Virus record (IMG/VR): IMGVR_UViG_3300028840_005860
Location: 166,070-230,069 of that record
Reading direction: 5' to 3' (one strand)
Length of the DNA stretch: 64,000 bases
Shown: one piece after another, positions 33,485 through 51,419 of the stretch
Numbering within the stretch: position 1 is the stretch's first letter
Layout: each line of letters begins with the position of its first letter
The notes under the pieces: generated by a model
Databases searched by the model: none
Seen by the model: only the letters and a program-made list of their open reading frames with translations
Told to the model about the DNA's origin: nothing
Translations under genes and position numbers: made by a program

Positions 33485-33488
33485 GGCG

Positions 33489-35390: not shown

Positions 35391-35393
35391 ACG

Positions 35394-35654
35394 ATGTCGA
35401 AGGGGATCATGCCGGGAGACCCGTCCAGGGCCGATCACAGGCTCGTGGGTTACGTCCTCAAGACCTTCTTCAAGGACAGGAAGGTCCTGCACGTGCCCGA
35501 AGAGTTCGACCGCGTGGGGCGCGTGTTCGAGCGGGCCGGGGGTTCCTGGGAGCACCTGTTCAAGGGCTCGATCAGGGACATCAACCTCCTCAAGCGGATC
35601 GTGAAGATCGCGATCAAAGAGGGTTTCATGTCGAAGGCTCCGCGCTTTCGGTAG
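35394..35654 (+). CDS. Hypothetical protein
   Basis: Tightly packed ORF with typical codon usage. Confidence 0.7.
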   Translation: MSKGIMPGDPSRADHRLVGYVLKTFFKDRKVLHVPEEFDRVGRVFERAGGSWEHLFKGSIRDINLLKRIVKIAIKEGFMSKAPRFR

Positions 35655-35655
35655 G

Positions 35656-36138: not shown

Positions 36139-36184
36139 ACCACCCACAGGAGCACAGAACACAGGACCCCAGGAGTAGCGAGCG

Positions 36185-39100
36185 ATGGCAGCGGAAGGCA
36201 GCAAGAACGCAATCGCGGGATCGGCGTCCCCGTCCTCACAGAGGAAGAACGAGGACGAGCGCGTCGTGGCGGACGTCCCGAACACCCGGCCCGAGCTGCA
36301 CATCGGCAAACCCACCCGCGTCGTCGTCGGATCTATGAGATCGAGGGGCGGCCCTACCAGCTTCCGCGCGAGGGTGGCGAGCTGCGGGCCGGGCACCGGC
36401 AGCTACGGCGGCGTCAGTGCCGGAGGCGGCGGCACCGGCTACGGAGGGTACGGAGGCTTCGGAGGGAACTTCGGAGCCGGAGCCGTCATGCAGGCGAGCT
36501 CCGGAAACTTCTACTCCCCCGAGCTGAGCACCGACTTCCTTGAGCTTCCCCAGTCGCTCAACGAGCAGTGGAACTACTACAGGTTCTTCTACGACAACGA
36601 ACCGTTCGTCGGGCAGGCGCTCGACCTGCACACCGAGCTGCCGCTGTCCAAGGTCCGGCTCGGGCGCCCGAAGGCCAACGACAGGCGGATGGCCGAGGCG
36701 TCTCTGCGGTTCTGCGAGAAGTGGGTGAAGCGCATCGGGCTGCTCCAGCGTCTGCTCGAGATCGTCCACGACTACTTCAAGATCGGAGAGGTCTACATCT
36801 TCTGCGAGGACGCCAACCCGGAGATCCCACAGGACGTCCGGAAGAAGGTCGTGAGGCGCGTCGAGGCGGACGGCACGCTGACGGAGACGTGGGTCGACCG
36901 CGAGGACGCGAACGAGCGCACCGTCAGGTGGATGAAGCAGCACTACAAGGGGTGGACCAGCATCAGGACCGTCCCGCCCGAGCAGATCCACCTCCAGACG
37001 TTCCCGTTCACCGACGAGGTGTTGATCGATCTGATCCCCGACTCGAAGAGCAGGCACCTGCTCGACATGGCCGACCAGGGCGACAAGTACGCCGCGCGCG
37101 TCGTCAAGTCCATGGATCCGGTCGTGGTGGAGGCCCTTCGCAGGGGAGAAAACGTCCCGCTCAGCACCGACCCGGACGGCGGCTCCTTCGTCCACTACAT
37201 GGCGAACAAGAAGTCGCAGTACGAGCCGAGGGGCCACAGCATCCTCCAGCGGTGCCTTCTTCCCGGCACGCTCATAACCGTCCAGCGCAACGGGATCGTG
37301 CGGCAGGTCCCCGTGGAGGACGTCGACACGACTACGGATCTCCTGTTGACCCACAAGGGTCGGTTCCGTCGGGCCACGGCAGGTTCTCGCCCGGTGCGCG
37401 AGAGGGTCGCGGTCCTGCGCATCGAAGGCGTCGAAGACCCCTTGGCCCTCACCACTGACCACGAGGTGCTCCTCGTGCGGGAAGACGGCACCGAGGCGTG
37501 GGTGCCCGCGGGCGAAGTGCGCGAGGGCGACATCGTGCGCGAGAGTCACGTTGTCCCGGAGAACGAGCCCGTCCCTGAGATCGACCTCGCGACGTGGTGG
37601 AGTAATCGGAGGCTCAACGTTGCGCGACGTTTCCGTGAAAACGCGAAGGAAGTCGAAATCCGCAACCGTGAGGTTCGCGTCATCGACGTCGAGGATGGTC
37701 CCGATGGGCTCACCGTCACCTTCGAGCACGACAACGACGACGCGGGTCAGATCGAGGCGACTGAGGGGATGCGTCGGTTCGTGGCATGGCTCAAGAACCT
37801 GGACGCGCCCACGGAGGCCACCTATGACGAGATCGCGGCCGTCACCGGAGTCGACAAGTCGAAACTCAGGAACTACGCGCACCTCCTCCGAAGGGAAGCG
37901 GATCTGCGCACCGAGAGTCGGAGCCTTGGACGGGGTCGAGGTCGTCGCACGACCTGGTGGCCCCTCTCTGGCGACGCGGTCGTCCCGCGAGAGACCCGCT
38001 GCGTCACGATGACGTCCCCCGTCGCCCGGATCGAGGTGGACGAGGGATTCTGTTACCTGCTCGGCACGTGGGTCGGAAACGGCAACATCTGGACCTCGGA
38101 CGAGTTGGTCCTCAATTCTCATTCCGTCGCTTGGACCGCGGGCACCGGCGACCTGGAGCAGGAAATCAAGGCAGAGGAGATGAGGCTCGCCAGTGCCTCC
38201 TTCGGCGACCAGTGCTCGGACGGCCACCTGTTTGGAGAGGAGTCCGGCTCCGACGCGTTCAGGATTGAGGATCCGCTCCTGGCGCGGTGGTTTATGGATG
38301 AGTTCGGGCACTCGGCCCAGAGCAAGCGGATCCCGAGGTGGCTCTTCGACCTCGACGAGGCTCGCGTGTTGGCGTTCCTGCGGGGACTGCTCGACACGGA
38401 CGGGAATCTCCAGGAGAGGACGACACAGACGACCATCAGGTTTGAGATGGATAACCGCGTCCTCCTCGACCAGGTGCATCTCCTCTGCAACAGGCTCGGG
38501 ATAAAGACCCAGGTCAGGAACTATGTGAAACCCGCGCGGTCGTGGACGCGGCGCTGGAAGACCAAGAGGGGTTGGAAAGAGAAGAGTTACCATTACGATG
38601 CCAAGGCGTACGCGACTCTCACGGCGACGCGCCACGCTGACGTGCGTCGTTGGGCCGAGGGGTCCGTCAAGGGATCGAAGGTCGAGTGGCAGGACAAGAC
38701 GCACCCGAACGCCCTGCGTACACAGTTCGTGAACGGATGGCTCACGCGGAGGGTCGAAGGCACCGGTTTGGTGCCATACGAAGGACTCGTGTTCTCGTTC
38801 GATGTCGAGGGAGACGAGTCTCACGTAACACATCAAATGGTGACCCATAACTGCTTGAGAACATTAGTATTTTTTGATAAGTTGAGACAGGCCCAGACCA
38901 GCATCGCCTCCCGGCACATGACGCCGATCCGGCTCGTCTACGCCGAGGACATGGACGAGGAGAACACCGAGGCCCTCCGCGACCAGATCGACCTCGCCCT
39001 CCAGGACCCGGACTACACCATCGTCACCAACTTCCAGGTGACGTGGGAGGAGATGAACTCGAACGGGCGCCTCCTCGAACTCTCGAGCGAGTACGACCTC

Positions 39101-39634
39101 ATCGCGCGGCAGCTCTACGCGGGGCTCGGCGTCACCGAGACCCTCCTGAACGGAGAGTCGAGCTACAGCGGCGACCGCATCAACCTCGAGGTCATCAACA
39201 CGCGCTACATGCTGCTCCGCGAGAACGTCCAGCGCCTCGTCGAGGAGTACTTCTTCAAGCCCATGTGTCGTCGGATGGGCTTCGTCGAGGAGGACGAGGA
39301 CGGCCAGCTCGAAGTGATCTACCCGCGCCTGAGCTTCACGCGGCTCGCCCTGCGCGACAACCAGGACACCTTCGACGCGCTGTTCAACCTCTACCAGAAG
39401 GGGAGCCTCGACATAGAGACGATCCTCGACCTGCTCAACATCGACCCGGTGGTCGTCCGTGAGAGGCTCGAGGCCGACTTCGGGACCTTCAACGACTCGC
39501 AGTTCAACGAGGTCCTGCGCTCCGCCTACGGGCGCGTCGGCGACCAGCTCGTCGAGGGGTCCGACATCGTTCAGAAGATCGCCGACGTCCTGGGCGTGGA
39601 CTACAAGAAGCCCGAGGAACCCGGACGGTTCTAG
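36185..39634 (+). CDS. Portal protein, intein-containing
   Basis: Downstream of TerL; about 616 aa after intein removal; RFFY..EPFVGQALD, G.SILQR and PIRLV portal-like segments. Confidence 0.8.
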   Translation: MAAEGSKNAIAGSASPSSQRKNEDERVVADVPNTRPELHIGKPTRVVVGSMRSRGGPTSFRARVASCGPGTGSYGGVSAGGGGTGYGGYGGFGGNFGAGAVMQASSGNFYSPELSTDFLELPQSLNEQWNYYRFFYDNEPFVGQALDLHTELPLSKVRLGRPKANDRRMAEASLRFCEKWVKRIGLLQRLLEIVHDYFKIGEVYIFCEDANPEIPQDVRKKVVRRVEADGTLTETWVDREDANERTVRWMKQHYKGWTSIRTVPPEQIHLQTFPFTDEVLIDLIPDSKSRHLLDMADQGDKYAARVVKSMDPVVVEALRRGENVPLSTDPDGGSFVHYMANKKSQYEPRGHSILQRCLLPGTLITVQRNGIVRQVPVEDVDTTTDLLLTHKGRFRRATAGSRPVRERVAVLRIEGVEDPLALTTDHEVLLVREDGTEAWVPAGEVREGDIVRESHVVPENEPVPEIDLATWWSNRRLNVARRFRENAKEVEIRNREVRVIDVEDGPDGLTVTFEHDNDDAGQIEATEGMRRFVAWLKNLDAPTEATYDEIAAVTGVDKSKLRNYAHLLRREADLRTESRSLGRGRGRRTTWWPLSGDAVVPRETRCVTMTSPVARIEVDEGFCYLLGTWVGNGNIWTSDELVLNSHSVAWTAGTGDLEQEIKAEEMRLASASFGDQCSDGHLFGEESGSDAFRIEDPLLARWFMDEFGHSAQSKRIPRWLFDLDEARVLAFLRGLLDTDGNLQERTTQTTIRFEMDNRVLLDQVHLLCNRLGIKTQVRNYVKPARSWTRRWKTKRGWKEKSYHYDAKAYATLTATRHADVRRWAEGSVKGSKVEWQDKTHPNALRTQFVNGWLTRRVEGTGLVPYEGLVFSFDVEGDESHVTHQMVTHNCLRTLVFFDKLRQAQTSIASRHMTPIRLVYAEDMDEENTEALRDQIDLALQDPDYTIVTNFQVTWEEMNSNGRLLELSSEYDLIARQLYAGLGVTETLLNGESSYSGDRINLEVINTRYMLLRENVQRLVEEYFFKPMCRRMGFVEEDEDGQLEVIYPRLSFTRLALRDNQDTFDALFNLYQKGSLDIETILDLLNIDPVVVRERLEADFGTFNDSQFNEVLRSAYGRVGDQLVEGSDIVQKIADVLGVDYKKPEEPGRF
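37253..38851 (+). mobile_element. Intein with LAGLIDADG endonuclease and extra HTH-like insertion (533 aa)
   Basis: R|CLLPGTLITV...LTTDHEV...LGTWVGNG...FLRGLLDTDG...MVTHN|C. Confidence 0.93.
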
Positions 39635-39636
39635 GA

Positions 39637-39651
39637 CGGTTTTCGCCCTAT
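39637..39651 (+). promoter_or_regulatory. Putative late promoter motif
   Basis: CGGTTTTCGCCCTAT, intergenic. Confidence 0.65.
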
Positions 39652-39675
39652 CGTGCGGCCTCTAGCGGAGGCCCC

Positions 39676-42240
39676 GTGCCCTCGCTCATCCCCGACAATT
39701 TCACGAAGGAGACGCCTCCCGAGCCGGTGCGTCAGCTCGCGGAGGCGTGGCTTCGCGCGAGGCTTCGGGGTGCCGAGCCCGACTTCCTCGACGTGGCGGA
39801 CGGGGCGGTGATCGGCGTCTACCGGCTGCCCTGCGGCCTCGTCAGGCGGGCGAGCCACAGCTTCTCGCGGTGCATGGCGAAGGGCTGCCAGAAGCCGCCC
39901 GAGGTGGAGTGCCTCTGGGCCGAGGGTCGCGGCCGTGCCTGGCACTGTCAGAAGCACCACGACGCCTGGGTGAAGGAGGACGGTCCGGACGGGCGCGACA
40001 TCATCAAGCAGCAGAAGATTCCCGACGGCGTCGTGGGCGAGAAGTACGGCGAGTATCCGGCGAAGAAGACGGCCGGGGACGGCGACGAGTTCAAGAAGGG
40101 CGACAGGATCGTCTACGGCCCGCTCGTGCCGCCCGGCCCCAGGTACCTGCCGGGGATCGTCGTGAAACCGCAGGCCCCCTCGAGCCTCGACAACCCCGTG
40201 ACGATCAGGGTGAAGGGAGAGGGCACGTTCGAGACCGACCCCGACAGCGTGACTCCGCTGTCCCGGTGGAAGCGAAACCCGGATCTCGGCAAGACGGCCA
40301 AGGCGACAGGCAAGAAGACCGGCGTCGGCGAGCACGTCGGGCTGTTCATCCCGCTTCCGAAGGATCTAGCCAAGAAGTTCCCGTCGCTCGGCGAGGACGA
40401 CCCGTCCCCGTCCCACGTGACCTTCCTCTACATCGGCGACTGCAAGGGCAAGCGCGACCAGAAGGTCCTGGTCGACACGCTCCGGGACGCCTGTCGGCGC
40501 TGGTGGCCCGGCGCCAAGGCCACGCTCGGGGGCCTCGAGTACTTCACCCACGAAGACAAGGATCGTCGCGTCCCCCACGTCTCCGTGGACTTCGACAAGG
40601 ACCTGTCGGGTTTCAAGCACCGCATCAGGCAGGAGCTCGAGGAGAACGGCGTCGAAGTCGAGGACAGCTGGCCCGACTTCAAACCCCACGTGACGCTCGG
40701 ATACCTACCGGGTACGGACTCCGAGTGGAAGGGCAAGGTTCCGAAGGGTTCCTGGAGTTTCGACGAGATGGAGGTCTGGGGTCTCCCGAAGGTCCACAAG
40801 CTCAAGCTCGGTCCCTCCATCTACAAGATCTCCGACACGTGGCTCCGCGGGAGGTTGCACCGCTACGTTGCCGCGCGCTACCTCGTTCGCAAGATCGCCG
40901 GATGGTGGGCCATCAGGCCGGGCAGTCCGGGAATCAACTGCCCGCCCGTGGACAAGGGCGGCCTCATGAATGCCATCCCCGGCACGGACCCGCCGGACGC
41001 CCGCTACAACGGGGACGGCCCGGCCGACATCATGGACGCCGCGCTCGCGGACGTCGACATGGAGTACCTGATGGAGTGGGGGCGCCCCGCGACCAAGCAG
41101 GAGCTCCAGGCGGTGTTCGACTTCTGCACTGGGGCCCTCCGCGAGGACGGTTCGAGGGACTACGGCAAGCACGAGCACGTGAATCAGTGGTTCGTCGAGT
41201 TCGCGGAATGGCTTGGCAAGAGGCCGAATGAGATCCGGTTCTTTCAGGGCGACAGCGACATCGTGGACGCCCTCCGGCAGAACTGGGACGGTACGGGCGA
41301 GTCCCTGGACGCCTACAAGAAGGAGATCCTGGACCTCGTCGACAAGACCAAGAAGTTCGAGGGCGGTCTCGAGGCCAAGGACCTGGCAGAGCGTCTGAAG
41401 GCCAGAACCCAGGTGATCCACGACGAGACCTTCCGGGGCGAGGACTGCCTGGAGGGGGGAGAAGATCCCGAGATCGTCATAAAGCGGGTAGCATCGAGGT
41501 ACATGGCCTCGATCCCGCACGGCAAGAACGTCGCCCTGATGAAGTGGCTCTCGGACGTGACCAGGCGCCTGGGCGTCGCCCGGGACACCTACGTCGTCGG
41601 GGGTGCGGTCAGGAACTTCCTCATCGGTCGGCCCATCAAGGATCTCGACGTGGTGATCGACTCGGTTCGGGCCGGACGCGACTCCGCGTGGCTGGCGGCT
41701 CAGATCTCCCGGCACGTGCCCGCTCCGACGAACGTCACGACGAACCAGTACGGCGTCGCCATCCTGACGATCAAGGGGAGCTGGGTCCTCGACGGCGAGG
41801 ACATGCGAGGCGAGGTGATCGAGATCGCCAACGCCCGCAAGGAGAGCTACGCGGAGGGACTCGGGAAGGGGCACAAACCCCATACGGTTGCCCCGGCCAC
41901 CATCGAGGAGGACGTCAGGCGTCGAGACTTTACGATGAACGCGCTTCTCTGGCGTCTGATGGACCTGGCGCACGGGCCCGAGAAGGCCGAGGTGATCGAC
42001 CTCACCGGCTGCGGCCGGCGCGACCTTGAGCAGGGGGTCCTGCGGTGCCCGCAGCCGCCCGACAAGGTGTTCTCTGACGATCCGACGAGGATGCTGCGTC
42101 TTGTTCGACTCGCCTCCAAGTACAATCTGAAAATCCCACCTGATGTGGCTGCCTCAGTACGCCGGAATGCAAGCAAACTGAAGAGAATGCCTTGGGAGGC
42201 GGTCGCGACGATCCTCATGCAGACACTGGAGGGCAGGTAA
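39676..42240 (+). CDS. Multidomain protein: Zn-finger-like, SH3-like, 2H phosphoesterase, and N-terminal part of a CCA-adding-type nucleotidyltransferase
   Basis: Two HxT motifs (SHVTF, PHVTL); YVVGGAVRN...KDLDVV, ARKESY, EEDVRRRDFTMNA, FSDDPTRMLR. Confidence 0.88.
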   Translation: MPSLIPDNFTKETPPEPVRQLAEAWLRARLRGAEPDFLDVADGAVIGVYRLPCGLVRRASHSFSRCMAKGCQKPPEVECLWAEGRGRAWHCQKHHDAWVKEDGPDGRDIIKQQKIPDGVVGEKYGEYPAKKTAGDGDEFKKGDRIVYGPLVPPGPRYLPGIVVKPQAPSSLDNPVTIRVKGEGTFETDPDSVTPLSRWKRNPDLGKTAKATGKKTGVGEHVGLFIPLPKDLAKKFPSLGEDDPSPSHVTFLYIGDCKGKRDQKVLVDTLRDACRRWWPGAKATLGGLEYFTHEDKDRRVPHVSVDFDKDLSGFKHRIRQELEENGVEVEDSWPDFKPHVTLGYLPGTDSEWKGKVPKGSWSFDEMEVWGLPKVHKLKLGPSIYKISDTWLRGRLHRYVAARYLVRKIAGWWAIRPGSPGINCPPVDKGGLMNAIPGTDPPDARYNGDGPADIMDAALADVDMEYLMEWGRPATKQELQAVFDFCTGALREDGSRDYGKHEHVNQWFVEFAEWLGKRPNEIRFFQGDSDIVDALRQNWDGTGESLDAYKKEILDLVDKTKKFEGGLEAKDLAERLKARTQVIHDETFRGEDCLEGGEDPEIVIKRVASRYMASIPHGKNVALMKWLSDVTRRLGVARDTYVVGGAVRNFLIGRPIKDLDVVIDSVRAGRDSAWLAAQISRHVPAPTNVTTNQYGVAILTIKGSWVLDGEDMRGEVIEIANARKESYAEGLGKGHKPHTVAPATIEEDVRRRDFTMNALLWRLMDLAHGPEKAEVIDLTGCGRRDLEQGVLRCPQPPDKVFSDDPTRMLRLVRLASKYNLKIPPDVAASVRRNASKLKRMPWEAVATILMQTLEGR

Positions 42241-42242
42241 TC

Positions 42243-43070
42243 GTGGCCGGAAGACCTTGGACGGAAGGAGAGGAGAGGCTTCTTCGCCACTTATGGAAGT
42301 CCGACCTCACGCGGGAGGAGGTCGCGGCACGGTTGCTAGGACGAACGCCGGTCGCCATACAGGTGAGGGCAAAGCGTCTTGGTCTTCGCCATACGGATGA
42401 GCAGTTCCGCCGGATCCTTTCGAAGAAAAGCAAGGGGGAGAACAATGGGATGTTCGGACGTGAGGGGCCGCGCAGAGGTGTAGTGCTCACTGTTACCCAG
42501 CGAGATCTTCTCAGAAAGAAGGCGCTCAACTCCTACAAGAATGGGCGACCCAAGATGGTCGGTGCTCGAAACCCGATGTTTGGTAAGCCGGGCACGATGC
42601 GCGGCAAGAAGTTGCCACCGTCGGCCAAGGCCACCCTCTCCGAGAAAGCCAAAGTCCGTTGGTGTCAGGCATCGGACGAGGAAAAGGCCAAGAAAGTCGC
42701 TCAGCTTCGTGAGGGTCGCGAGCGTCTCGGACGTGACAGCCCCTCATCGATCGAGGTGGCGATGAGGGAATGGTTGTCAGACTTGCAAACTGACTTTGAA
42801 GCACAGGTCGTGATTGGGTTCTACACCGTCGATTTCCTTGTATCGGAGAACAAGGTCATCGAGTGTCACGGCGACTATTGGCACGCGCACCCTGAGAAGT
42901 ACGCGAGCGGCGACCTTGATGAGACGCAACGGCATAATGTTCACCGAGACCGCCGCAAGGCCACTTTTCTCCGAAATCGGGGTTATGGGCTGCTTGTGAT
43001 GTGGGAGAGTGACATCAAGGAGCGTCCTTCGTGGTGCGTCTCGCAAGTGGAGGATTTTCTTCATGGGTGA
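42243..43070 (+). mobile_element. Free-standing homing endonuclease (HTH + NUMOD3 + Vsr/DUF559-like nuclease)
   Basis: WTEGEE..L...GRT..AI..RA..LGL; GENNGMFG and GARNPMFG; SSIE...YTVDF...IECHGDYWH; lower GC; own RBS. Confidence 0.85.
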
Positions 43071-43503
43071 TCCCAGGAAGGCTCTTCAGCAGATGAAGCA
43101 GCTCGGGCTGCTCGAGGTGGTCTCCGAGATGATCAGGTCGAGCAAGCCCTTCTCCGCCTACATGGCGAACCAGCTGCGGACGAACAGGAGGGTCCCCCTC
43201 CTCCTCGACCTCATGGACATGGGGGTCCCCGCGACCACGCCCCTCTCGTTCCTCGACCGCGCGGGACAGCAGCGCGTCCGCGAGGTCACGATGCCGATGA
43301 CAGAGCGCGAGGCCGCGGACTTCGTGAACCTCCTGATCAAGCCGCCCGTGGACAACAGGCGGATCATCGAGGAGCTCGGGCTCCCAGGTCCCGAGCGGCG
43401 CCTCATCCTGCCGATGGCGCGCGACCTGATCCTCAAGAACCCCCCTCTCGCGGCCGACGGGCGCAGGCTGACCGAGGAGGTCCTCCGAGCATGGCCGCGC
43501 TAG
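43063..43503 (+). CDS. C-terminal part of the split CCA-adding enzyme
   Basis: MGDPRKALQQMKQLGLLE matches the helix that follows motif E in class II CCA enzymes; VDNRRIIEELGLPGPE tail motif; GGAGG RBS inside the endonuclease gene. Confidence 0.75.
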   Translation: MGDPRKALQQMKQLGLLEVVSEMIRSSKPFSAYMANQLRTNRRVPLLLDLMDMGVPATTPLSFLDRAGQQRVREVTMPMTEREAADFVNLLIKPPVDNRRIIEELGLPGPERRLILPMARDLILKNPPLAADGRRLTEEVLRAWPR

Positions 43504-46500
43504 CACAGCTGGCCCTCCGCGTCGCCGCGAGGCACCTCGCAGCCGACGCCTACTTCGAGGTCGGCGAGGAGGTGCTGTACGGCAAGTTCAAGAACCGTCG
43601 CGGTCGGGTCGTCAGGATCTTCGACGACGAGCGCGGCGTCCCCTCCGTGGAGATTGAGCCGATCCCGAAGGGCCGCAGGCAGAACAGGATGGTGGGCCTC
43701 TACGGGATCTGGAAGCTGCCCGAGGCGCGGAAGACCGCAGCGATGGACCGCGAGGCCTGCATCATCGCGGGCCGCAAGTTCGGGGACGGCCTGTGCCTCA
43801 TGAAGACCCGCGACCGGGCCTACGATCCGAAGCTCCAGGTGCTCCACGTCGAGCGGGACGGCACCGAGATGGCCGTGGTGTTCGACAAGACCACGGGCTA
43901 CCTGGAGGGCGTCAACGAGCACGGCATCGGCATCGTCAACACGACGCTCATGGTCGTCCGGGACGAGCAGGAGGGCGTCAAGAAGACCAAGGGCGACAAG
44001 CAGAAGGGGCCCAAGAGGTCCAAGGACGGTCCCAAGATCTTCAAGGCGCTCGAGGCCGAGACCCTCGACGACGCCATCCGCTCCCTCGTCTCCTTCCGCG
44101 GCGGCATCAAGGGTCACACGTTCGTGGCGGACGGCGAGCGCATGGTCTGCATCGAGCGCAGCGGCAGGCATCCGGCCAAGATCCACCGCCTCGACCCGAC
44201 GCGCGTGAACACGCGCACCAACCACGGAGTCGCCTACCCCGACGCCGGCTACACCCACGGGGACGACTACGTGTCGTCCATCGTGCGGCGCTGGGAGGCC
44301 CAGAAGCGCCTCCAGAACGTGAACAATCCCGAGGTCGTGGCCCCGGCCCTGGTCCAGGCGATCCACGAGGCCGACAGCCCGTTCAACCCGGTCCGCTGCA
44401 CCGACAAGATGCGGACCACGAGCCAGCTCACCATCGACACGACGAACCCGACGCTCTACCTGTACGTCATCCCCGGGCACGCCGACCTCTCCCCCCCGCG
44501 CAACGTCCTCCCCGACGGCCGACGCCCCAAGATCCCCGTGCGGACCTTCCGCTACCGGCAGAGGATGGAGGACCGCACGGAGCAGCCGGGCCGGAAGACC
44601 GCGCGGGAGGTGCTCGCGCGCTACAAGTCGAAGAAGAAGGTCAGGTCCGAGGACGGCGACGAGACGACCGTCTACGAGTACTCCGAGCGCCAGGTCCAGC
44701 ACCGCAACCGCGAGAAGGCCGAGCGCATCGAGAGGCTCCGTGGATCGATAGGCAAACTCCGCGCGCAGCTCGAGAAGGACATCAGATCCGACGACCCCAA
44801 GAAGCGCGACGTCGCGGCCGCCGTGGGCCTCATGGATCACACGTACGAGCGTCCCGGCAACGACGAGTCGGCGTCCGACGGCCACTATGGCGTGACCAAC
44901 TGGAAGGTGCGGCACGTCAGGTTCGGCGACGGCCAGGCCAAGATCAGCTACGTCGGCAAGTCGGGCGTCAGGCAGCAGAAGTCCGTCACGGACCGAGACC
45001 TCGTGAAGGCGCTCAGGGCCGCCTGCGCCGACAAGGGCGCCGAAGCGACCTGCCTGGACGTGAGCGCCGACGAGGTCAACGAGTACCTCAGGCCCTTCGG
45101 CGTCACGGCGAAGGACCTGCGAGGGCTGCACGCCAACGGGGAGATGAAGGACCGGCTCAGGCGCGTGCGCCGGGAGGGCGGCCCGCTGCCCGAGGACCCG
45201 GAGAAGCGCGAGGAGAAGCTCAGGAAGGAGTTCGACAGGGCCCTGGACGAGGCCGCGGAGACGGTGGGCCACGAGCCTTCGACCCTCAAGAGCCAGTACC
45301 TCGTGCCCGGCCTGGAGGAAGACTACAAGAGGGACGGCACCGTGAGCGAGAGCCACGCCAAGAAGGCGGCCGAGGCCGTGACCGACACGGCGTCCTTCTA
45401 CGTGATCGCGCCCGAGGCGCTCAGGGGCATGCTCGACGACACCGACTGGCTCGAGCTCGCTCACGACCTATGGCCTGGAGAAGGGCGCCCGGGCGGCGAC
45501 GCCGAGGTGCTCGTGCCCGAGATGGAACGCCAGGTCCGCGAGAGCGGTGGCGCCGTGCTCGACACCGGATGGGACGGCGGCTTCGACGTCGGCGTGAGGG
45601 GCAAGTACGACGAGCTGGGCCGGATCGAGCCCTTCGACCTGCCCGTTCGCGAGAAGGGCGCGGTGCCTCCCTACGGGTTGCGCAAGAGCGCGTCGCTGCT
45701 GCGCGTCGCCGCCGAGGAGGGGACCTCGGCCGAGCGCAGGATCCTCGCCAACGCCCTGGTGGCCCCCGTGCTCGTGGCCCGGACGCGCGAGTGGTGGCTC
45801 CGCGAGGCGCCCCACCTGTACCGGATTGCTCGCGATCACGAGAAGCCTCGACCTCGCATCGAGGGCCTCGAGTTTCCGTCCAATCTTTTCACGATCCTAT
45901 GGTACGAAGACGCGGACGGGAACGACCTGGGAGACGGGGACCTTGAAGGAGAGCCGGGCGCGCCAGAAGGAGCACAGTACCAGCACAGCCAGTTCCCGCA
46001 CGTCCTGCACCACAACGTCCTGCGCCTCAACGACGACGGAACCTCCACGGACCTCGGCGGCGGCGAGGCGTCCTACCCGGAAGACCTCGTGAACGCGATG
46101 GTTCGCAGCGGGGACTGGGACGTGGGCGACGCGATCATGGTCGCCGCCCAGTCGTGCGAGCGGTGCCTGAACGTCCTGTGCCACCATTACGACCTGGACG
46201 ACGGCTACCCGTTCGGGTCCGAGGAGTACTGGAGCGCTGGCACCCGTTGTCCGATGTGCGAGAACGTGCATGCTCCCGCTCGCACGGCCGCGACGCCGAA
46301 CTACGAGGCGTACGTCGAGCGCAAGAGGCGGGAGGGAGAACCCCCGCTCGACCGCGAGCGGTGGGAGCGCAGGGTCCTGGGCGTGCGCGACGAAGAGGGT
46401 CCGCGCGACTGGGACGCGCACCGCAGAGACGTGATGCGGCGTCACGAGCTGGACAAGCTGCACGCGCCCTACGATCCCGAGAACAAGCACCTGCGCATCG

Positions 46501-49500
46501 ACCTGATCAGCGTCCGAAGGGACGCGCGCGGAGAGGGTCACGCCCGACGGGCGATGGAGGAGATCCTCGGATGGGCGGACCGGGCCGGAGCGACCGTCAC
46601 GCTGACGCCGACCTCCGAGTTCGGCGCGTCCAAGAAGCGCCTGACGCGGTGGTACGAGGGCATGGGGTTCGTCCCGAACAAGGGCAGGAACAAGGATTTT
46701 CGGTTTCAGGACGCGATGATCCGCGCCCCCCAAGTCAAGACCGCCACGAAGTCCGACGCCGAGCTCGACGAAGAGGCGGTCGAGGAGATGCTCCGCGAGG
46801 AGCCCAAGAAGAAGCCGCCTCGCTACGATCTGCGGGACAACCGACCCTTGGAGGACGACGACGAGGAGGACCTCGAGGGCCTCGGCGGCGGGGACCGGGG
46901 CGACCGGGACCTGAGCCTCAAGTGGAACAAGGTCGGCAGGCGCGTGGCGTTTCGCTGGCTGGCGACTCCCGGAAGGCTCTCGGCGGTCAGGACCGCCATG
47001 CGTCATCGGGCGAAGGTCACGCCCGACTCCGAGTTCCAGAAGGAGATCGCGGACAAGAAGTTCAGGCACCCGGAGACGGGCAACGAGGTCGCGTTCGGCT
47101 CCCTGCCGACCGAGGAACAGCACCGGATTTTCGAGGAGTGGAAGAAGAAGCACGCGCCGAAGGGGGAACCGGCCGAGGGCAAAGAGAAACCCAAGGAGGA
47201 GCCCGAGGGTCGGTCGCCCGAGGAGATCGACCAGGACATCTCCGAGGCCCGCGAGGCGGCCAAGAAGTTGAAGGGCGAGATCCGCGACCTGAAGGAGAAG
47301 ATTGGCGACGCGAAGAAGGCCATCGAGGACTGGACCGAGCTCACGAAGGGAGAGGTCGGCGAGGAGATGAGGAAGAAGGGCGACGCCGTCATCAAGGAGA
47401 TGAAGCGCATCGTCCTGGATGCCGAGGACGACATCGAGTACAAGACCCAGGACCTCAAGGACGCGCGCAGACGCGTCCAGGAGCTGAAGGAGGAGCGCGA
47501 GGACCCGACCGGAGCTAAGGCGAAGAAGGAGCAGGAGGAGAGGGAGCAGAAGGAGAAGCGGACGCGGCAGGCCGTCAAGGACACGGTCGCGGCGATGGAG
47601 AAGATGCTCGGCAGGGGGTCGAGGCTGCCGCAGGGGACGAGGCAGGAGATCGAGAGTGCGCTGGGCGACTTCGACTACCCCCAGCTCGAGGCGTTCGCGC
47701 TGGCGTTTCAGGGCGAGCTCAAGGACCTCAGCGGACAGGACCCGACGTCGCCCGACGTGATCTCCATGGCGAACCGGCAGGCGAAGATCGGCTTCGACGT
47801 GGAGGGTGTCACGGATCCCGAGGAGCTGGCGAGGCGTGCCGCGGAGGTCGGCTACGTGACGAACGTGGTCGCCAACCCGATGGTCGTGGGAGGCAGGCCC
47901 GTCGGGCAGACGGAGATGGACGACGCGGCACGGTCGGCGCGGGCGAGGGAGGCGTTCGCCCAGTTCGAGAATCTCCACCCGAAGCTGCAGCGCATGGCGG
48001 CGGAGCGCATCCGCGAGGAGCTAAGGGGCCTCGACGAGGACACCGACCGCGCCGTGGAGCTCGAGTCGATCCTCAGCGCCGTCGACCTGGCGCACGTGGG
48101 CCAGACCGGAGAGGCCCTCCCCGGACGCCCGCAGCCGAGCGCCGGCAACGCCGCGCTGATCAAGCGCATGATCGCGGACGGCAACGCCGACAGGATGTTC
48201 CAGACGAAGAAGGACTTCTTCTCGGAGGGATCGCGGGAGGCGATGGCGCAGGCGCTCGAGGAGATGGACGACGCCGACGTGGCCAATTTCATCACGGGCG
48301 ACGACCCGAGCCACCCGTTCTACGAGCTCTCCCAGAGCATGAGGACCGAGGGCGCGGGCGAGTTCAACCAGATGATCAAGGACTTCCTGATCAAGGACTT
48401 CCTGAACGACACGTGGGGCGACCGGGCCGCGCGCGACGTGATGGAGGCCGCGGGCGTCGAGGACTGGGACAGCCCGGAGGCGCGGGCCGAGCTGCTCGAG
48501 GAGTCCAAGCGAGCCGGCGAGACGCCCCTGGGTCAGGTGCTGGAGGCGAAGGAGCGTGTCGAGGCGGCGCGGGCCGCGGGCGAGGAACCCAGCCAGGACG
48601 ACCTGGACCTCGTGAGTTCGTACTTCGAGCCCGAGGCCGGCGAGGGGGTCGTCGGCAATGCCAGGGCCCTCCTCGGCCTCCTGAGGGACAAGTTCAAGAA
48701 GCACGTGATCTCGCCCGCCGTGGCCGTGCTCAACCACTTCGTGAAGACGCGGGATCCGAAGGTACTCAGCCAGGAGACGTTGCCGCACCCGGACGAGAGA
48801 TCCCCTGAGCCGAGACCCAAGGAGGAGCGCGAGAAGGCGCGGGTCGAGATGCCCACCGAGGCAGAGGCGCCCGAGAGCAAGCCTGGTAAGCCCGAGGTCG
48901 TGGCTCCCGAGTGGGCCGCGGAAGGACGCAAACCGGCCGAGGACCTGACCCCTGAGAAGGCGATGCGCAGGCGCATCGTCCTGAAGAGCGAGCGCCAGAA
49001 GCTAGAGGCCCAGCGAGAGAAGGCGCCGCCCGAGGAGCGCGGCAAGTACGACGTCAAGATCAGGAAGCTGGACAAGGAACTCGAGAGAGCCAGCGTTCCG
49101 AAGAGACCGGAGAAGAAGGCCCCTGAGCCGGAGAAGAAGGCCCCTGAGCCGGAGAAGGTGAAGGAGCCTGAGGTGGTGCGGAAGCGTCGCAAGCAGCTCG
49201 AGAAGGTGAAGTCCGTGCGCGACGAGGCCAGGGCGGCGCTGAAGGAGATGGAGCCCGCGGCCCGGAAACAGCTCGAACAGAAGCTCGAGAAGATGGACGC
49301 CGCCATCAGGCAGGTCGAGGAGCAGCACGCCGAGGACGAGAAGCACGGCCCCGGGGACGTCTGGAAGACCAAGGGAGGAAACTGGCGCGCCAAGAACGAG
49401 GAGGGTCTCTCCAGGAGTTTCAAGAAGAGGGACGAGGCCGAGACGTACGCGAGAGGGGAGCCCGAAAAGGAGTGGAGCGCCGAGTTCAAGGCAGTCTCGC

Positions 49501-49625
49501 CCGAGGAGGCCTGGCGCGGGCCGACGCGCTTCGCGGGGAACGTGACCGACGCGTGGCTCGCCCGCATCCGAAGCATCCATCCCGACGATCCCGACCGCCC
49601 CGTCATCGTGCTCGACGCGGCCTGA
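43491..49625 (+). CDS. 2044-aa polyprotein-like head protein: SH3-like, Ntn hydrolase, DNA topoisomerase IB, GNAT, coiled-coil domains
   Basis: CIIAG...KTRD...EGVNEHG...RTNHG (Ntn); ERPGN, VGKSG, KDLRG, VGHEP..LKSQY (Topo IB R-K-R-H-Y); ISVRRDARGEGHARRAM...WYEGMGF (GNAT). Confidence 0.85.
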   Translation: MAALAQLALRVAARHLAADAYFEVGEEVLYGKFKNRRGRVVRIFDDERGVPSVEIEPIPKGRRQNRMVGLYGIWKLPEARKTAAMDREACIIAGRKFGDGLCLMKTRDRAYDPKLQVLHVERDGTEMAVVFDKTTGYLEGVNEHGIGIVNTTLMVVRDEQEGVKKTKGDKQKGPKRSKDGPKIFKALEAETLDDAIRSLVSFRGGIKGHTFVADGERMVCIERSGRHPAKIHRLDPTRVNTRTNHGVAYPDAGYTHGDDYVSSIVRRWEAQKRLQNVNNPEVVAPALVQAIHEADSPFNPVRCTDKMRTTSQLTIDTTNPTLYLYVIPGHADLSPPRNVLPDGRRPKIPVRTFRYRQRMEDRTEQPGRKTAREVLARYKSKKKVRSEDGDETTVYEYSERQVQHRNREKAERIERLRGSIGKLRAQLEKDIRSDDPKKRDVAAAVGLMDHTYERPGNDESASDGHYGVTNWKVRHVRFGDGQAKISYVGKSGVRQQKSVTDRDLVKALRAACADKGAEATCLDVSADEVNEYLRPFGVTAKDLRGLHANGEMKDRLRRVRREGGPLPEDPEKREEKLRKEFDRALDEAAETVGHEPSTLKSQYLVPGLEEDYKRDGTVSESHAKKAAEAVTDTASFYVIAPEALRGMLDDTDWLELAHDLWPGEGRPGGDAEVLVPEMERQVRESGGAVLDTGWDGGFDVGVRGKYDELGRIEPFDLPVREKGAVPPYGLRKSASLLRVAAEEGTSAERRILANALVAPVLVARTREWWLREAPHLYRIARDHEKPRPRIEGLEFPSNLFTILWYEDADGNDLGDGDLEGEPGAPEGAQYQHSQFPHVLHHNVLRLNDDGTSTDLGGGEASYPEDLVNAMVRSGDWDVGDAIMVAAQSCERCLNVLCHHYDLDDGYPFGSEEYWSAGTRCPMCENVHAPARTAATPNYEAYVERKRREGEPPLDRERWERRVLGVRDEEGPRDWDAHRRDVMRRHELDKLHAPYDPENKHLRIDLISVRRDARGEGHARRAMEEILGWADRAGATVTLTPTSEFGASKKRLTRWYEGMGFVPNKGRNKDFRFQDAMIRAPQVKTATKSDAELDEEAVEEMLREEPKKKPPRYDLRDNRPLEDDDEEDLEGLGGGDRGDRDLSLKWNKVGRRVAFRWLATPGRLSAVRTAMRHRAKVTPDSEFQKEIADKKFRHPETGNEVAFGSLPTEEQHRIFEEWKKKHAPKGEPAEGKEKPKEEPEGRSPEEIDQDISEAREAAKKLKGEIRDLKEKIGDAKKAIEDWTELTKGEVGEEMRKKGDAVIKEMKRIVLDAEDDIEYKTQDLKDARRRVQELKEEREDPTGAKAKKEQEEREQKEKRTRQAVKDTVAAMEKMLGRGSRLPQGTRQEIESALGDFDYPQLEAFALAFQGELKDLSGQDPTSPDVISMANRQAKIGFDVEGVTDPEELARRAAEVGYVTNVVANPMVVGGRPVGQTEMDDAARSARAREAFAQFENLHPKLQRMAAERIREELRGLDEDTDRAVELESILSAVDLAHVGQTGEALPGRPQPSAGNAALIKRMIADGNADRMFQTKKDFFSEGSREAMAQALEEMDDADVANFITGDDPSHPFYELSQSMRTEGAGEFNQMIKDFLIKDFLNDTWGDRAARDVMEAAGVEDWDSPEARAELLEESKRAGETPLGQVLEAKERVEAARAAGEEPSQDDLDLVSSYFEPEAGEGVVGNARALLGLLRDKFKKHVISPAVAVLNHFVKTRDPKVLSQETLPHPDERSPEPRPKEEREKARVEMPTEAEAPESKPGKPEVVAPEWAAEGRKPAEDLTPEKAMRRRIVLKSERQKLEAQREKAPPEERGKYDVKIRKLDKELERASVPKRPEKKAPEPEKKAPEPEKVKEPEVVRKRRKQLEKVKSVRDEARAALKEMEPAARKQLEQKLEKMDAAIRQVEEQHAEDEKHGPGDVWKTKGGNWRAKNEEGLSRSFKKRDEAETYARGEPEKEWSAEFKAVSPEEAWRGPTRFAGNVTDAWLARIRSIHPDDPDRPVIVLDAA

Positions 49626-50456: not shown

Positions 50457-50481
50457 CCCCTTCCTGGTCGGTTCTCTGCCC

Positions 50482-51411: not shown

Positions 51412-51419
51412 GAGCACCG

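What the first reader, a model, noticed from the sequence alone, without database searches (positions are those of the whole stretch)
39676..43503. 2H phosphoesterase fused to a CCA-adding enzyme next to the portal: possible virion-delivered tRNA-repair/anti-defence protein
Seen: two HxT motifs (His codons at 40414 and 40687) and class II nucleotidyltransferase motifs, with an intact flexible loop (RKESY...KP) and no poly(A)-polymerase G[RK][RK]F signature. Known: 2H enzymes hydrolyse 2',3'-cyclic phosphates, and the T4 Acb1 member destroys CBASS signals; several defence toxins damage tRNA 3' ends (for example CapRel/toxSAS pyrophosphorylation); the slot after the portal often holds MuF-type ejected proteins with variable enzyme domains. 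Inference: an end-healing plus CCA re-addition unit and/or anti-CBASS activity delivered at injection.
Basis: partly seen in the sequence, partly recalled or inferred. Interest (0 to 1): 0.75.

Follow-up and report, generated by a model that had tools for sequence, protein, structure and literature searches.

The report
Split tRNA-repair enzyme beside phage portal
A giant uncultured phage encodes, right after its portal gene, a protein that joins an RNA-end-cleaning (2H) domain to a CCA-type tRNA nucleotidyltransferase.

Summary
The motifs are real. His247-V-T and His338-V-T sit at 40414 and 40687. GGAVR/DLD, RRD and DDPTR are present, and there is no G[RK][RK]F signature. The portal, which carries an intein, lies directly upstream.

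But 39676-43503 is three genes:
- an 854-aa protein made of a Cys/His module, a LigT-like 2H domain, a helical domain of unknown fold, and the head and neck of a class II nucleotidyltransferase;
- a free-standing Vsr/DUF559-type homing endonuclease (42243-43070), inserted exactly inside the transferase coding sequence;
- a 146-aa ORF (43063-43503) encoding the transferase body and tail.

Uninterrupted homologues exist. Some relatives keep the split after the endonuclease has decayed. The two pieces are predicted to re-associate.

The unit belongs to a conserved block, portal, then transferase with or without 2H, then a topoisomerase IB giant. In relatives this block is fused into polypeptides of up to 3,381 aa and swaps in HAD_SAK_1, RNA ligase, pyrophosphatase, Fic, GNAT and ART domains, in the style of polyvalent proteins.

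The best reading is healing of tRNA 3' ends followed by CCA rebuilding. This is the genome's only such transferase, and 22 of its 36 tRNA genes lack an encoded CCA. Packaging into the capsid is plausible but untested. An Acb1-like anti-CBASS role is poorly supported. HMM scores cannot separate CCA-adding from poly(A) activity.

The parts
36185..39634 (+). Portal protein gene (1149 aa) interrupted by a 533-aa LAGLIDADG intein (residues 357-889, 37253-38851). This is context for the finding.
   Evidence: phrog_16240 portal E 4e-25 and LAGLIDADG_3 E 9e-10. Intein borders C357 and HN|C889 read from the sequence. Intein-free 575-661-aa ORFs occupy the same position upstream of the unit in related contigs; only this window's ORF was tested as a portal.
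39676..42240 (+). Gene 1: an 854-aa multidomain protein. GTG start, with RBS GGAGG at 39667-39671.
   Evidence: Homologues P0005, P0007, P0008 and P0011 are 50-59% identical over 76-93% of its length.
39853..40065 (+). N-terminal Cys/His module (about residues 60-130). Its conserved motif is C-x4-C ... W-x-C-x2-H, a probable small zinc-binding domain of unknown role.
   Evidence: C71 and C91 are invariant in 25 homologous segments. There is no Pfam or PHROG match. The Atlas search was uninformative.
40321..40851 (+). 2H phosphoesterase domain (residues 216-392). The two HxT motifs are at 40414-40422 and 40687-40695.
   Evidence: Pfam PF13563, E 8e-8. TIGR02258 RNA 2',3'-cyclic phosphodiesterase, E 6e-9, below its cut-off. 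AlphaFold model with pLDDT 89.6. The best PDB matches are LigT, drCPDase and TT0787. Motif residues are invariant.
40852..41550 (+). Middle region (residues 393-625). It holds a conserved core of about 120 aa (AGWWA ... YNGDGPAD ... WGRPAT) followed by a variable helical linker. Function unknown.
   Evidence: Alignment A4. The model has pLDDT 72 and is all-helical. There is no significant fold match in PDB or AFDB clusters.
41551..42237 (+). Head and neck of a class II (PolyA_pol-type) nucleotidyltransferase, residues 626-854. Motif A is GGAVR 41599-41613 with DLD 41641-41649. RRD is at 41920-41928. Motif D, DDPTR, is at 42076-42090. The frame ends at TAA 42238-42240.
   Evidence: PF01743, E 1e-18. 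phrog_2244 tRNA nucleotidyltransferase, E 8e-33, matching profile positions 4-176 of 392 only. Mean column identity is 75% across 60 homologues.
42243..43070 (+). Gene 2: a free-standing homing-endonuclease gene (275 aa from GTG 42243, RBS GGAGG 42228-42232). It has an N-terminal HTH, NUMOD3-like repeats and a C-terminal Vsr/DUF559 nuclease domain.
   Evidence: DUF559, E 5e-5, above its cut-off. Vsr TIGR00632, E 7e-7. It is 49% identical to the endonuclease at the same site in L007. It is single-copy in this genome. Start and RBS were read.
43063..43503 (+). Gene 3: the 146-aa body and tail piece of the nucleotidyltransferase. Its ATG 43063 overlaps the endonuclease stop (ATGGGTGA). RBS GGAGG is at 43049-43053.
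   Evidence: 65% identical to residues 866-1005 of the uninterrupted homologue P0005. Junction analysis. Predicted to bind the N piece with ipSAE 0.81 against a best control of 0.55.
43491..49625 (+). Downstream partner gene: a 2044-aa polyvalent-type giant with a topoisomerase IB catalytic core (residues 403-601) and a GNAT domain (about residues 995-1060). Its start overlaps the stop of gene 3.
   Evidence: Pfam Topoisom_I, E 1e-24; Acetyltransf_1, E 7e-4. Relatives fuse the transferase and Topoisom_I into single proteins of 2740-3381 aa. Synteny is conserved.
57248..58126 (+). Major capsid protein gene. It marks the far end of the head-morphogenesis block that contains the finding.
   Evidence: phrog_2522 major head protein, E 7e-50.

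Best explanation
The locus encodes a two-piece RNA 3'-end repair and maturation enzyme.

Shown:
- An 854-aa protein carries an intact LigT-like 2H phosphoesterase and the catalytic head and neck of a class II tRNA-type nucleotidyltransferase.
- A Vsr-like homing-endonuclease gene has inserted precisely between two codons of the transferase gene. It adds a stop, two ribosome-binding sites and a new ATG.
- The 146-aa body and tail are therefore made as a separate polypeptide.
- The split loses no residue and adds one Met.

Inferred:
- The two pieces re-associate without a covalent bond into a working transferase.
- The 2H domain opens 2',3'-cyclic phosphate ends on tRNAs that have lost part of their 3' end. 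The transferase then rebuilds CCA.
- This would serve the phage's 22 CCA-less tRNA genes and also host or phage tRNAs clipped by host RNase defences.
- The protein is one module of a portal-adjacent polyvalent enzyme set, together with the topoisomerase IB-GNAT giant. It is probably loaded into the capsid and injected, so that it acts before phage genes are expressed.
For: Architecture and split:
- ORFs, stops, starts and RBSs.
- The uninterrupted homologue P0005 aligns to gene 1 up to its residue 859 and to gene 3 from residue 866.
- The codon-level junction is ILMQTLEGR*|MGDPRKAL against ILVNDILTQ|PTARRSL.
- Five of 107 relatives end at the same residue.
- L007 has the split together with a homologous endonuclease.
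- L005 has the split with only a 51-nt endonuclease remnant, and both of its ORFs are intact.
- At least 8 of the 150 best 50%-identity clusters start with the C piece at residue 3-5.
- Complex prediction gives 0.81 against a best control of 0.55. That mark was reached by 58 of 80 solved complexes and by 2 of 110 mismatched pairs.

Activity:
- The HxT motifs are invariant.
- The 2H fold is nearest to LigT/ThpR and to the Deinococcus CPDase.
- The transferase head is 75% conserved, with all catalytic motifs present.

RNA-repair context:
- The transferase is fused in relatives with 2H, in both orders.
- It is also fused with HAD_SAK_1, RNA ligase, InPase, HD and PAP2.

tRNA link:
- The genome has 36 tRNA genes, and only 14 encode CCA.
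- This is the only PF01743 gene in the genome.

Packaging:
- The gene lies between the portal and the major capsid protein.
- The same slot is occupied in seven related contigs.
- Relatives are fused to topoisomerase IB giants and carry ART-PolyVal, Fic, C39 peptidase, GNAT and InPase domains. These are typical of phage polyvalent proteins, which are predicted to be packaged (PMC5512222).
- The best viral structural neighbours of the 2H domain include proteins annotated as capsid morphogenesis or structural proteins in actinophages.

Precedent for cyclic-phosphate removal followed by CCA re-addition: PMC11897441 and bioRxiv 10.1101/2021.08.05.455008.
Against: - No biochemical or proteomic data exist, and no RNA-seq run was found among the runs that hold the sequence (kind 'any', not a dedicated RNA search).
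- LigT-type 2H enzymes leave a 2'-phosphate (established biochemistry, from my own knowledge). That group may still block extension, and no phosphatase domain is present in this copy.
- HMMs cannot tell CCA-adding from poly(A) polymerase. PcnB scores 87-97 bits and actinobacterial CCA 86-88 bits, both far below their cut-offs.
- The last roughly 100 residues match no canonical tRNA-binding body or tail model.
- There is no MuF domain and no fusion to a portal.
- Some relatives carry 2H in this slot with no transferase at all (L021).
- In isolates with related portals (phage G, Tunturi_5) the transferase lies far from the portal.
- The complex score partly reflects that the model simply recognises one cut fold.
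Confidence: 0.5

Rival explanations
1. This is housekeeping only. The enzyme matures the phage's own tRNA transcripts by adding CCA to the 22 tRNAs whose genes lack it. It is made late with the structural genes, is not packaged, and has no counter-defence role. The 2H domain tidies processing intermediates.
For: - The genome has 36 tRNA genes and only 14 encode CCA.
- This is the only class II transferase in the genome.
- CCA enzymes are common in jumbo phages that carry many tRNAs (PMC7824862; phage hits).
- In phage G and Tunturi_5 the transferase is not near the portal.
Against: - This reading does not explain the conserved position inside the head module, or the fusions to topoisomerase IB, Fic, ART-PolyVal, GNAT and C39 domains.
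- It gives no source of cyclic-phosphate ends during normal maturation. No ribozymes were detected beside the tRNA genes.
- The host very probably has its own CCA enzyme (from my own knowledge).
Confidence: 0.25
2. This is anti-signalling. The 2H domain acts like Acb1 or the viral 2',5'-phosphodiesterases and destroys cyclic or 2'-5'-linked nucleotide alarm signals (CBASS, type III CRISPR, OAS-like). The transferase has a separate function.
For: - 35 of 66 family members give weak Acb1 (PF23474) hits, and AKAP7-type hits are common.
- Viral 2',5'-PDEs and a poxvirus cGAMP PDE appear among the structural matches.
- Iyer et al. proposed this role for 2H domains of polyvalent proteins (PMC5512222).
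Against: - The Acb1 hits are below the gathering score. Acb1 structures rank 47th (E 1.2e-3, TMq 0.39), behind LigT, CPDase, Usb1 and AKAP18.
- The recurrent partners are RNA-end enzymes: the transferase, RNA ligase and HAD_SAK_1.
Confidence: 0.08
3. This is RNA tailing or turnover. The transferase is a poly(A)- or poly(N)-polymerase-like enzyme, and the 2H domain is a Usb1-like 3' exoribonuclease. Together they remodel or destabilise host, or early phage, RNAs.
For: - The PcnB subfamily HMM scores as high as the CCA models.
- The C-terminal region that sets specificity is divergent.
- Usb1 is among the good structural matches, with TM about 0.6.
- Iyer et al. considered an RNase role.
Against: - The G[RK][RK]F poly(A)-polymerase signature is absent.
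- The motif D template residues DDxxR and a full-length flexible loop are present.
- The protein matches PHROG families annotated as tRNA nucleotidyltransferase.
- The genome is rich in tRNA genes.
Confidence: 0.12
4. The gene is dead. The endonuclease insertion inactivated the transferase, and the 146-aa ORF is a decaying remnant.
For: A stop codon interrupts the gene. No split intein or intron is present to rejoin the parts.
Against: - No residue is lost at the junction, and both pieces have their own RBS and start.
- The C piece is 65% identical to uninterrupted homologues over its full length.
- The split persists with intact ORFs after the endonuclease has decayed in L005, and it recurs in several divergent clusters.
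- The pieces are predicted to associate.
- There is precedent in the Aeh1 NrdA split, which is functional (PMC3045599).
Confidence: 0.05

Closest known systems
Phage polyvalent proteins (Iyer, Burroughs, Anand, de Souza, Aravind 2017, PMC5512222)
   Same: - Several unrelated enzyme domains are strung together and encoded among portal/terminase-type virion genes.
- A 2H domain is one of the recurrent modules.
- Relatives carry ART-PolyVal, InPase, GNAT, peptidase and Fic domains.
   Different: - That paper never mentions a CCA-type transferase (0 occurrences). It also states that polyvalent 2H domains never associate with RNA ligases, whereas relative P0055 joins transferase, RNA ligase and 2H.
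- No MuF domain or portal fusion is present here.
- The constant partner in this clade is topoisomerase IB.
Bacterial multifunctional CCA addition/repair protein (E. coli Cca with its C-terminal HD domain)
   Same: It is a class II transferase joined to a phosphoesterase. From my own knowledge (Yakunin et al. 2004), that phosphoesterase has 2',3'-cyclic phosphodiesterase and phosphatase activity. The logic is the same: clean the end, then add CCA.
   Different: - The phosphoesterase here is an N-terminal 2H domain, not a C-terminal HD domain.
- The NF008137 HMM scores only 54-63 bits against a cut-off of 451.
- The protein is phage-borne, split in two, and carries extra domains.
Eukaryotic tRNA recycling: ANKZF1/Vms1 cut, ELAC1/TMS5 removal of the 2',3'-cyclic phosphate, then TRNT1 CCA re-addition
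   Same: It is the same two-step chemistry proposed here: cyclic-phosphate removal from tRNA lacking CCA, then CCA synthesis (PMC11897441; bioRxiv 10.1101/2021.08.05.455008).
   Different: In eukaryotes the steps are done by separate, unrelated proteins, and the phosphatase is an RNase Z-type metallo-beta-lactamase enzyme rather than a 2H domain. Here the two activities sit in one phage polypeptide.
LigT/ThpR RNA 2',3'-cyclic phosphodiesterase
   Same: It is the best structural match (4qak and 5ldm, E 3e-7). Both have two HxT motifs, and TIGR02258 gives E 6e-9.
   Different: - Identity is only 17-20%, with TM 0.5-0.66.
- The HMM score of 36 bits is below the cut-off of 65.7.
- The domain is embedded in a multidomain phage protein.
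Phage anti-CBASS protein Acb1
   Same: It is a phage 2H-fold enzyme.
   Different: The match is weak (rank 47, E 1.2e-3, TMq 0.39). Pfam Acb1 hits are below the cut-off. Acb1 is a small stand-alone protein.
Genes in pieces made by free-standing homing endonucleases: Aeromonas phage Aeh1 nrdA/mobE (PMC3045599), and fractured genes with Vsr-like endonucleases (Dassa et al. 2009, PMC2677866)
   Same: - A conserved phage enzyme gene is cut in two by a free-standing endonuclease gene that brings its own expression signals.
- The endonuclease is of the Vsr-like family described by Dassa et al., who also reported an intein-less case in an SbcD-like gene.
   Different: - The target is new: a tRNA nucleotidyltransferase.
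- No split intein is present.
- A lineage that keeps the split after the endonuclease has decayed is documented here (L005).
T4 Pnkp/Rnl1 tRNA repair
   Same: It is a phage-encoded pathway of end-healing followed by restoration, countering host tRNA nucleases.
   Different: T4 repairs anticodon-loop breaks with kinase/phosphatase and ligase. This locus has no ligase or kinase and targets the 3' end. No RNA ligase was found in the genome above the cut-off.

Membership tests
2H phosphoesterase superfamily | Two H-x-T/S motifs on a duplicated alpha+beta lobe fold | tested here: met
   HVT at 247-249 and 338-340. Both His and the first Thr are invariant, and the second Thr nearly so, in 66 segments. 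The model has pLDDT 89.6, and 46 PDB matches at E<=1e-3 are essentially all 2H proteins.
LigT/ThpR RNA 2',3'-cyclic phosphodiesterase (TIGR02258 equivalog) | HMM score above the curated cut-off | tested here: not met
   36.1 bits against a cut-off of 65.7. It is the nearest known fold but this is not a member.
LigT/ThpR RNA 2',3'-cyclic phosphodiesterase | Hydrolysis of RNA 2',3'-cyclic phosphate | not testable with these tools
   Needs an enzyme assay.
Acb1 anti-CBASS nuclease (PF23474) | Pfam score above the gathering threshold, or close structural match | tested here: not met
   There is no Acb1 hit for this protein. The best among 66 relatives is E 8.5e-5, and the two relatives scanned in full (P0040, P0037) scored 25.7 and 23.1 bits against a gathering score of 27. 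The structure 7t26 ranks 47th, with TMq 0.39.
Class II (PolyA_pol, PF01743) nucleotidyltransferases | Head-domain HMM above its cut-off, with motifs A (GGxVR, DxD), B (RRD) and D ([ED]DxxR) | tested here: met
   68 bits against a cut-off of 23. GGAVR 642, DLD 656, RRD 749 and DDPTR 801 are present.
CCA-adding enzyme (NCBIfam equivalogs TIGR02692, NF009814, NF008137) | HMM score above the curated cut-off | tested here: not met
   86-88, 72-77 and 54-63 bits against cut-offs of 438, 290 and 451.
CCA-adding enzyme | Template-independent addition of exactly C-C-A to tRNA | not testable with these tools
   Needs an assay with both pieces co-expressed.
Bacterial poly(A) polymerase I (PcnB) | The signature [LIV][LIV]G[RK][RK]Fx[LIV]h[HQL][LIV], and HMM score above its cut-off | tested here: not met
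   The signature is absent in both pieces. TIGR01942 scores 87-97 bits against a cut-off of 305.
Phage polyvalent proteins | Several unrelated enzyme domains in one polypeptide, encoded within the virion (portal/terminase) gene block | tested here: met
   2H plus the transferase plus two uncharacterised modules. The gene lies between the portal and the major capsid protein. Relatives are fused to topoisomerase IB, GNAT, Fic, ART-PolyVal, InPase and C39.
Phage polyvalent proteins | MuF or portal anchor domain in the same protein | tested here: not met
   There is no Phage_Mu_F or portal domain in this protein, nor among the Pfam lists of the 120 listed relatives.
Phage polyvalent proteins | Packaged in the capsid and injected | not testable with these tools
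   Needs virion proteomics. No cultured close relative was found.
Free-standing homing endonuclease, Vsr-like family | A Vsr/DUF559-type nuclease domain with DNA-binding modules, in its own ORF | tested here: met
   DUF559 scores 23.6 bits against a cut-off of 20.6. Vsr TIGR00632 gives E 7e-7 over 103 of 119 positions. NUMOD3-like repeats were seen by eye.
Free-standing homing endonuclease | Sits in a conserved gene that exists uninterrupted elsewhere, with presence/absence polymorphism at one site | tested here: met
   The gene is contiguous in about 99 relatives. It is split with an endonuclease in the window and in L007, and split with an endonuclease remnant in L005.
Free-standing homing endonuclease | Site-specific cleavage of the uninterrupted allele | not testable with these tools
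   Needs a cleavage assay.
Group I intron with an endonuclease ORF | Structured intron RNA core flanking the ORF | tested here: not met
   No Rfam intron match even at E<=10. The endonuclease ORF fills the whole insert: 2 nt after the stop, and its end overlaps the next ATG.
Intein or split intein | Hint-domain halves at the junction | tested here: not met
   The N piece ends and the C piece begins at homologous residues, with only one extra Met. Stops are present in frame.

The most novel reading that the evidence does not exclude
An uncultured clade of phage G-related jumbo phages loads its capsid with a modular enzyme kit: topoisomerase IB, a CCA-type transferase, 2H, and variable extras. 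One part of the kit is a non-covalently reassembled, two-piece tRNA 3'-end repair enzyme. It would be injected with the DNA, so that host tRNA-clipping defences are undone before any phage gene is expressed.
Probability: 0.3. Interest if true: 0.75.

Novelty: new variant of a known kind. Interest (0 to 1): 0.55.

Why it matters
- If the two pieces assemble and the protein is packaged, this would be the first injected tRNA 3'-end repair activity. It would extend phage counter-defence from anticodon-loop repair (the T4 paradigm) to the acceptor end.
- It would also give a one-polypeptide bacterial-virus analogue of the eukaryotic pathway of cyclic-phosphate removal followed by CCA re-addition.
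- The split offers a natural, evolutionarily tested fragment-complementation site in a class II nucleotidyltransferase.
- The portal-adjacent topoisomerase IB, transferase and 2H module defines a large, uncharacterised family of giant phage proteins.
- If it is only a tRNA-maturation enzyme, the finding is an ordinary jumbo-phage accessory gene with an unusual gene structure.

Tried and rejected
- Group I intron: no Rfam hit at the gathering threshold, nor at E<=10 over 41800-43700, and the insert has no non-coding room. Rejected.
- Intein or split intein at the junction: rejected.
- Read-through or an alternative genetic code: several different stops lie in frame between the pieces, and nothing in the genome suggests recoding. 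Not pursued.
- Close relatives in the phage collection (GenBank/INPHARED): megablast found none. tblastn found only distant transferase matches and one weak 2H match.
- PDB sequence search with the 2H domain: nothing.
- ESM Atlas look-alikes for the N-terminal and middle regions: uninformative, because the stored model is poor.
- Fold of the middle domain: helical, with no match in PDB or AFDB clusters.
- A shared targeting domain between gene 1 and the topoisomerase IB giant: none by BLASTP.
- Ribozymes next to the tRNA genes, as a possible source of cyclic-phosphate ends: none at E<=0.1.
- RNA evidence for splicing or expression: the search (kind 'any') returned only DNA runs from sediment and seawater metagenomes. 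All three that hold the sequence show the same endonuclease-bearing arrangement and no endonuclease-less joints.
- A second transferase, or an RNA ligase, in the genome: none above the cut-offs.
- Promoter and terminator scan of 33000-52000: nothing on the + strand.

Full report
**Source and setting.** The window is the last 64 kb of a 230,069-bp IMG/VR viral contig (about 65% G+C, CheckV completeness about 90%). Identical sequence occurs in sediment and seawater metagenome runs. Its portal is 67% identical to that of a 485-kb uncultured huge phage. It is more distantly related to the portals of Tunturiibacter phage Tunturi_5 and Bacillus phage G. So this is a phage G-related jumbo phage with no cultured close relative.

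**Checking the observation.**
- The + strand ORF 39676-42240 (854 aa) has HVT at residues 247-249 and 338-340.
- Pfam finds a 2H domain (PF13563, E 8e-8) and the PolyA_pol head domain (PF01743, E 1e-18). PHROGs calls the C-terminal part a tRNA nucleotidyltransferase (E 8e-33).
- GGAVR, DLD, RRD and DDPTR are present, and there is no G[RK][RK]F.
- In an alignment of 66 homologous 2H segments, both His and the first Thr are invariant and the second Thr nearly so.
- The upstream gene is the portal, itself interrupted by a 533-aa LAGLIDADG intein.
- The motifs and the neighbourhood are therefore real.

- The PHROG profile matched only positions 4-176 of 392, so the transferase is truncated.
- The frame ends at TAA 42238-42240.
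- Two bases later, GTG 42243 opens a 275-aa ORF in another frame, preceded by GGAGG at 42228-42232. Its C-terminus is a Vsr/DUF559 nuclease: DUF559 scores above its cut-off, and Vsr TIGR00632 gives E 7e-7. Its N-terminal part carries an HTH and NUMOD3-like repeats.
- Its stop overlaps ATG 43063 (ATGGGTGA), which is preceded by GGAGG at 43049-43053. That ATG opens a 146-aa ORF running to 43503.
- This last ORF is 65% identical to residues 866-1005 of the uninterrupted 1006-aa homologue P0005. Residues 243-859 of P0005 align with gene 1.
- At codon level the junction is ILMQTLEGR*|MGDPRKAL against ILVNDILTQ|PTARRSL. Nothing is lost and one Met is gained.

**The insert is not an intron or an intein.**
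- Rfam finds no intron even at E<=10, and the endonuclease ORF fills the entire insert.
- Several stops lie in frame, and no Hint sequences flank the junction.
- This is a gene in pieces made by a free-standing homing endonuclease. It belongs to the Vsr-like family first described in phage "fractured genes", which included an intein-less case (PMC2677866). It is analogous to the functional split NrdA of phage Aeh1 (PMC3045599).

**Is the split enzyme alive?**
- Of 107 relatives carrying this transferase, about 99 are contiguous and three have inteins inside the head domain. Five, including this one, end at exactly the same residue.
- L007 has the split with a 49%-identical endonuclease.
- L005 and L006 have the split with only a 51-nt spacer. 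That spacer retains the endonuclease start and a fragment of its NUMOD3 region. Both transferase ORFs there are intact.
- A profile of the C piece, searched against 1.84 billion cluster representatives, finds 240 proteins. In at least eight of the best 150 the domain starts at residue 3-5, so they are stand-alone or N-terminal C pieces.
- The head and neck are very strongly conserved, with 75% mean column identity.
- A complex prediction of residues 615-854 with the 146-aa piece scored 0.81 against a best control of 0.55. That mark was reached by 58 of 80 solved complexes and by 2 of 110 mismatched pairs. The caveat is that the model is recognising one cut fold.
- I conclude that the split form is most likely functional through non-covalent assembly.

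**The domains.**
- The 2H domain folds with high confidence (pLDDT 89.6). Its nearest solved structures are E. coli LigT/ThpR (E 3e-7), the Deinococcus CPDase and TT0787. Next come Usb1, AKAP18 and the viral 2',5'-PDEs. Acb1 is 47th (E 1.2e-3, TMq 0.39).
- TIGR02258 (RNA 2',3'-cyclic phosphodiesterase) is the only NCBIfam hit, but it scores below its cut-off. Acb1 Pfam hits in relatives are below threshold.
- The best viral structural neighbours are 2H domains inside large actinophage proteins. These are annotated RNA ligase, capsid morphogenesis protein or structural protein.
- The N-terminal Cys/His module (C71 and C91 invariant) has no assignable function or fold. The same is true of the helical middle region.
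- The transferase cannot be assigned to CCA-adding or poly(A) polymerase by HMM. PcnB scores 87-97 bits and actinobacterial CCA 86-88 bits, all far below their cut-offs. The motif D residues, the full flexible loop and the missing poly(A)-polymerase signature favour a tRNA enzyme but do not prove it.

**Context.**
- The gene order is portal, then gene 1 / endonuclease / gene 3, then a 2044-aa protein with a topoisomerase IB core and a GNAT domain. After that come a protease-like gene with an intein and, further on, the major capsid protein at 57248-58126.
- No + strand promoter-like or terminator-like site lies between these genes.
- Seven related contigs hold the unit in the same slot, directly after an ORF of portal size. 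The content of the slot varies:
  - 2H with the transferase;
  - the transferase with DUF5661 and HAD_SAK_1;
  - the transferase with RNA ligase and 2H;
  - 2H alone;
  - 2H-Fic-2H followed by a separate 412-aa transferase.
- In the 485-kb phage LR745208.1 the slot holds HAD_SAK_1 fused to topoisomerase IB, with no transferase.
- In other relatives the transferase and topoisomerase IB are parts of single proteins of 2,740-3,381 aa.
- Further partners are InPase, ART-PolyVal, C39 peptidase, GNAT, SOD, HD and PAP2.
- This is the syntax of phage polyvalent proteins, which Iyer et al. predict to be packaged and injected (PMC5512222). That paper does not mention a CCA-type transferase. It also states that polyvalent 2H domains never accompany RNA ligases, which P0055 contradicts.
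- 51 of the 107 transferase relatives carry this 2H: 33 upstream of the transferase and 18 downstream.

**The tRNA link.**
- The genome has 36 tRNA genes, of which only 14 encode CCA.
- It has a single PF01743 gene and a single 2H gene, both in this locus.
- No RNA ligase scores above its cut-off.
- No ribozymes flank the tRNA genes.

**Mechanism.**
- Shown: the domain content, the intact catalytic motifs, the precise split, its recurrence, the conserved head-module position, and the fusions.
- Inferred: the pieces assemble. The 2H domain opens 2',3'-cyclic phosphate ends. The transferase rebuilds CCA on truncated tRNAs and completes the phage's CCA-less tRNAs. The unit is packaged with the topoisomerase IB giant.
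- The same two-step chemistry is documented in eukaryotic tRNA recycling (PMC11897441; bioRxiv 10.1101/2021.08.05.455008). From my own knowledge, it is also documented in the HD domain of E. coli Cca.
- A weak point is that LigT-type enzymes leave a 2'-phosphate, and this copy has no phosphatase. Relatives that carry HAD_SAK_1, HD or PAP2 may cover that step.

**Rivals and verdict.**
- The rivals are pure housekeeping, anti-signalling, RNA tailing and a dead gene. They are weighed in the report sections.
- The locus is a new variant of known kinds, combining a polyvalent or "Swiss-army-knife" RNA-repair protein with an endonuclease-fractured gene.
- Interest is moderate. It would become high only if packaging and two-piece activity are shown.

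Noticed in passing
window 37253-38851 (inside the portal gene 36185-39634): The portal gene carries a 533-aa intein with a LAGLIDADG endonuclease domain. Its borders are Cys357 and His-Asn|Cys889. ORFs at the same position in related contigs are 575-661 aa long and lack it.
   Followed up: partly
window 43491-49625: A 2044-aa protein with a eukaryotic/poxvirus-type topoisomerase IB core (residues 403-601) and a GNAT domain sits inside the head module. Topoisomerase IB is the most constant element of the portal-adjacent slot across this phage clade, which recalls the virion-packaged topoisomerase IB of poxviruses.
   Followed up: partly
window 52063-54843 and 58293-61436: Two more large ORFs carry selfish-element domains. 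The first is a protease-like head gene with Hint/intein and LAGLIDADG_3 matches. The second is a 1047-aa ORF that matches a PHROG family of LAGLIDADG homing endonucleases (no Hint/intein match was tested) and also has methyltransferase-like and HTH matches. This genome is heavily colonised by selfish elements.
   Followed up: no
genome G000 positions 29-126 kb (outside the window); one tRNA-Ser at window 7666-7746 (- strand): There are 36 tRNA genes, many in tight tandem arrays 1-5 nt apart. Twenty-two lack an encoded CCA. No ribozymes were detected beside them.
   Followed up: yes
L005 11936-11992: In a relative that has lost the endonuclease, the two transferase ORFs are in the same frame. 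They are separated by a single TAG and 17 sense codons. Stop-codon read-through would give a contiguous protein, but this may be chance in G+C-rich DNA.
   Followed up: no
L014 11398-16582: In a 357-kb relative, the topoisomerase IB giant gene itself appears to be cut by a NUMOD3-bearing endonuclease gene. The pieces are a 288-aa Topoisom_I piece, a 255-aa ORF with a faint NUMOD3 match, and a 1186-aa remainder with HAD_SAK_1.
   Followed up: no
P0013, P0026, P0063 (relatives): Three relatives carry a LAGLIDADG intein inside the transferase head domain, right after the RRDFT(F)N motif. This is a second, independent insertion site for selfish elements in the same enzyme.
   Followed up: partly
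window 40852-41250 (residues about 393-525): A conserved module of about 120 aa (AGWWA ... PPVDKG ... YNGDGPAD ... WGRPAT ... FDF) has no Pfam, PHROG or fold match. It is duplicated in relative P0038 and also follows 2H in proteins that lack the transferase.
   Followed up: partly
window 41818-41851: In all three metagenome runs the assembly breaks at the same 34-nt node, which has higher depth than its flanks. This suggests a short sequence shared with co-occurring related strains.
   Followed up: no
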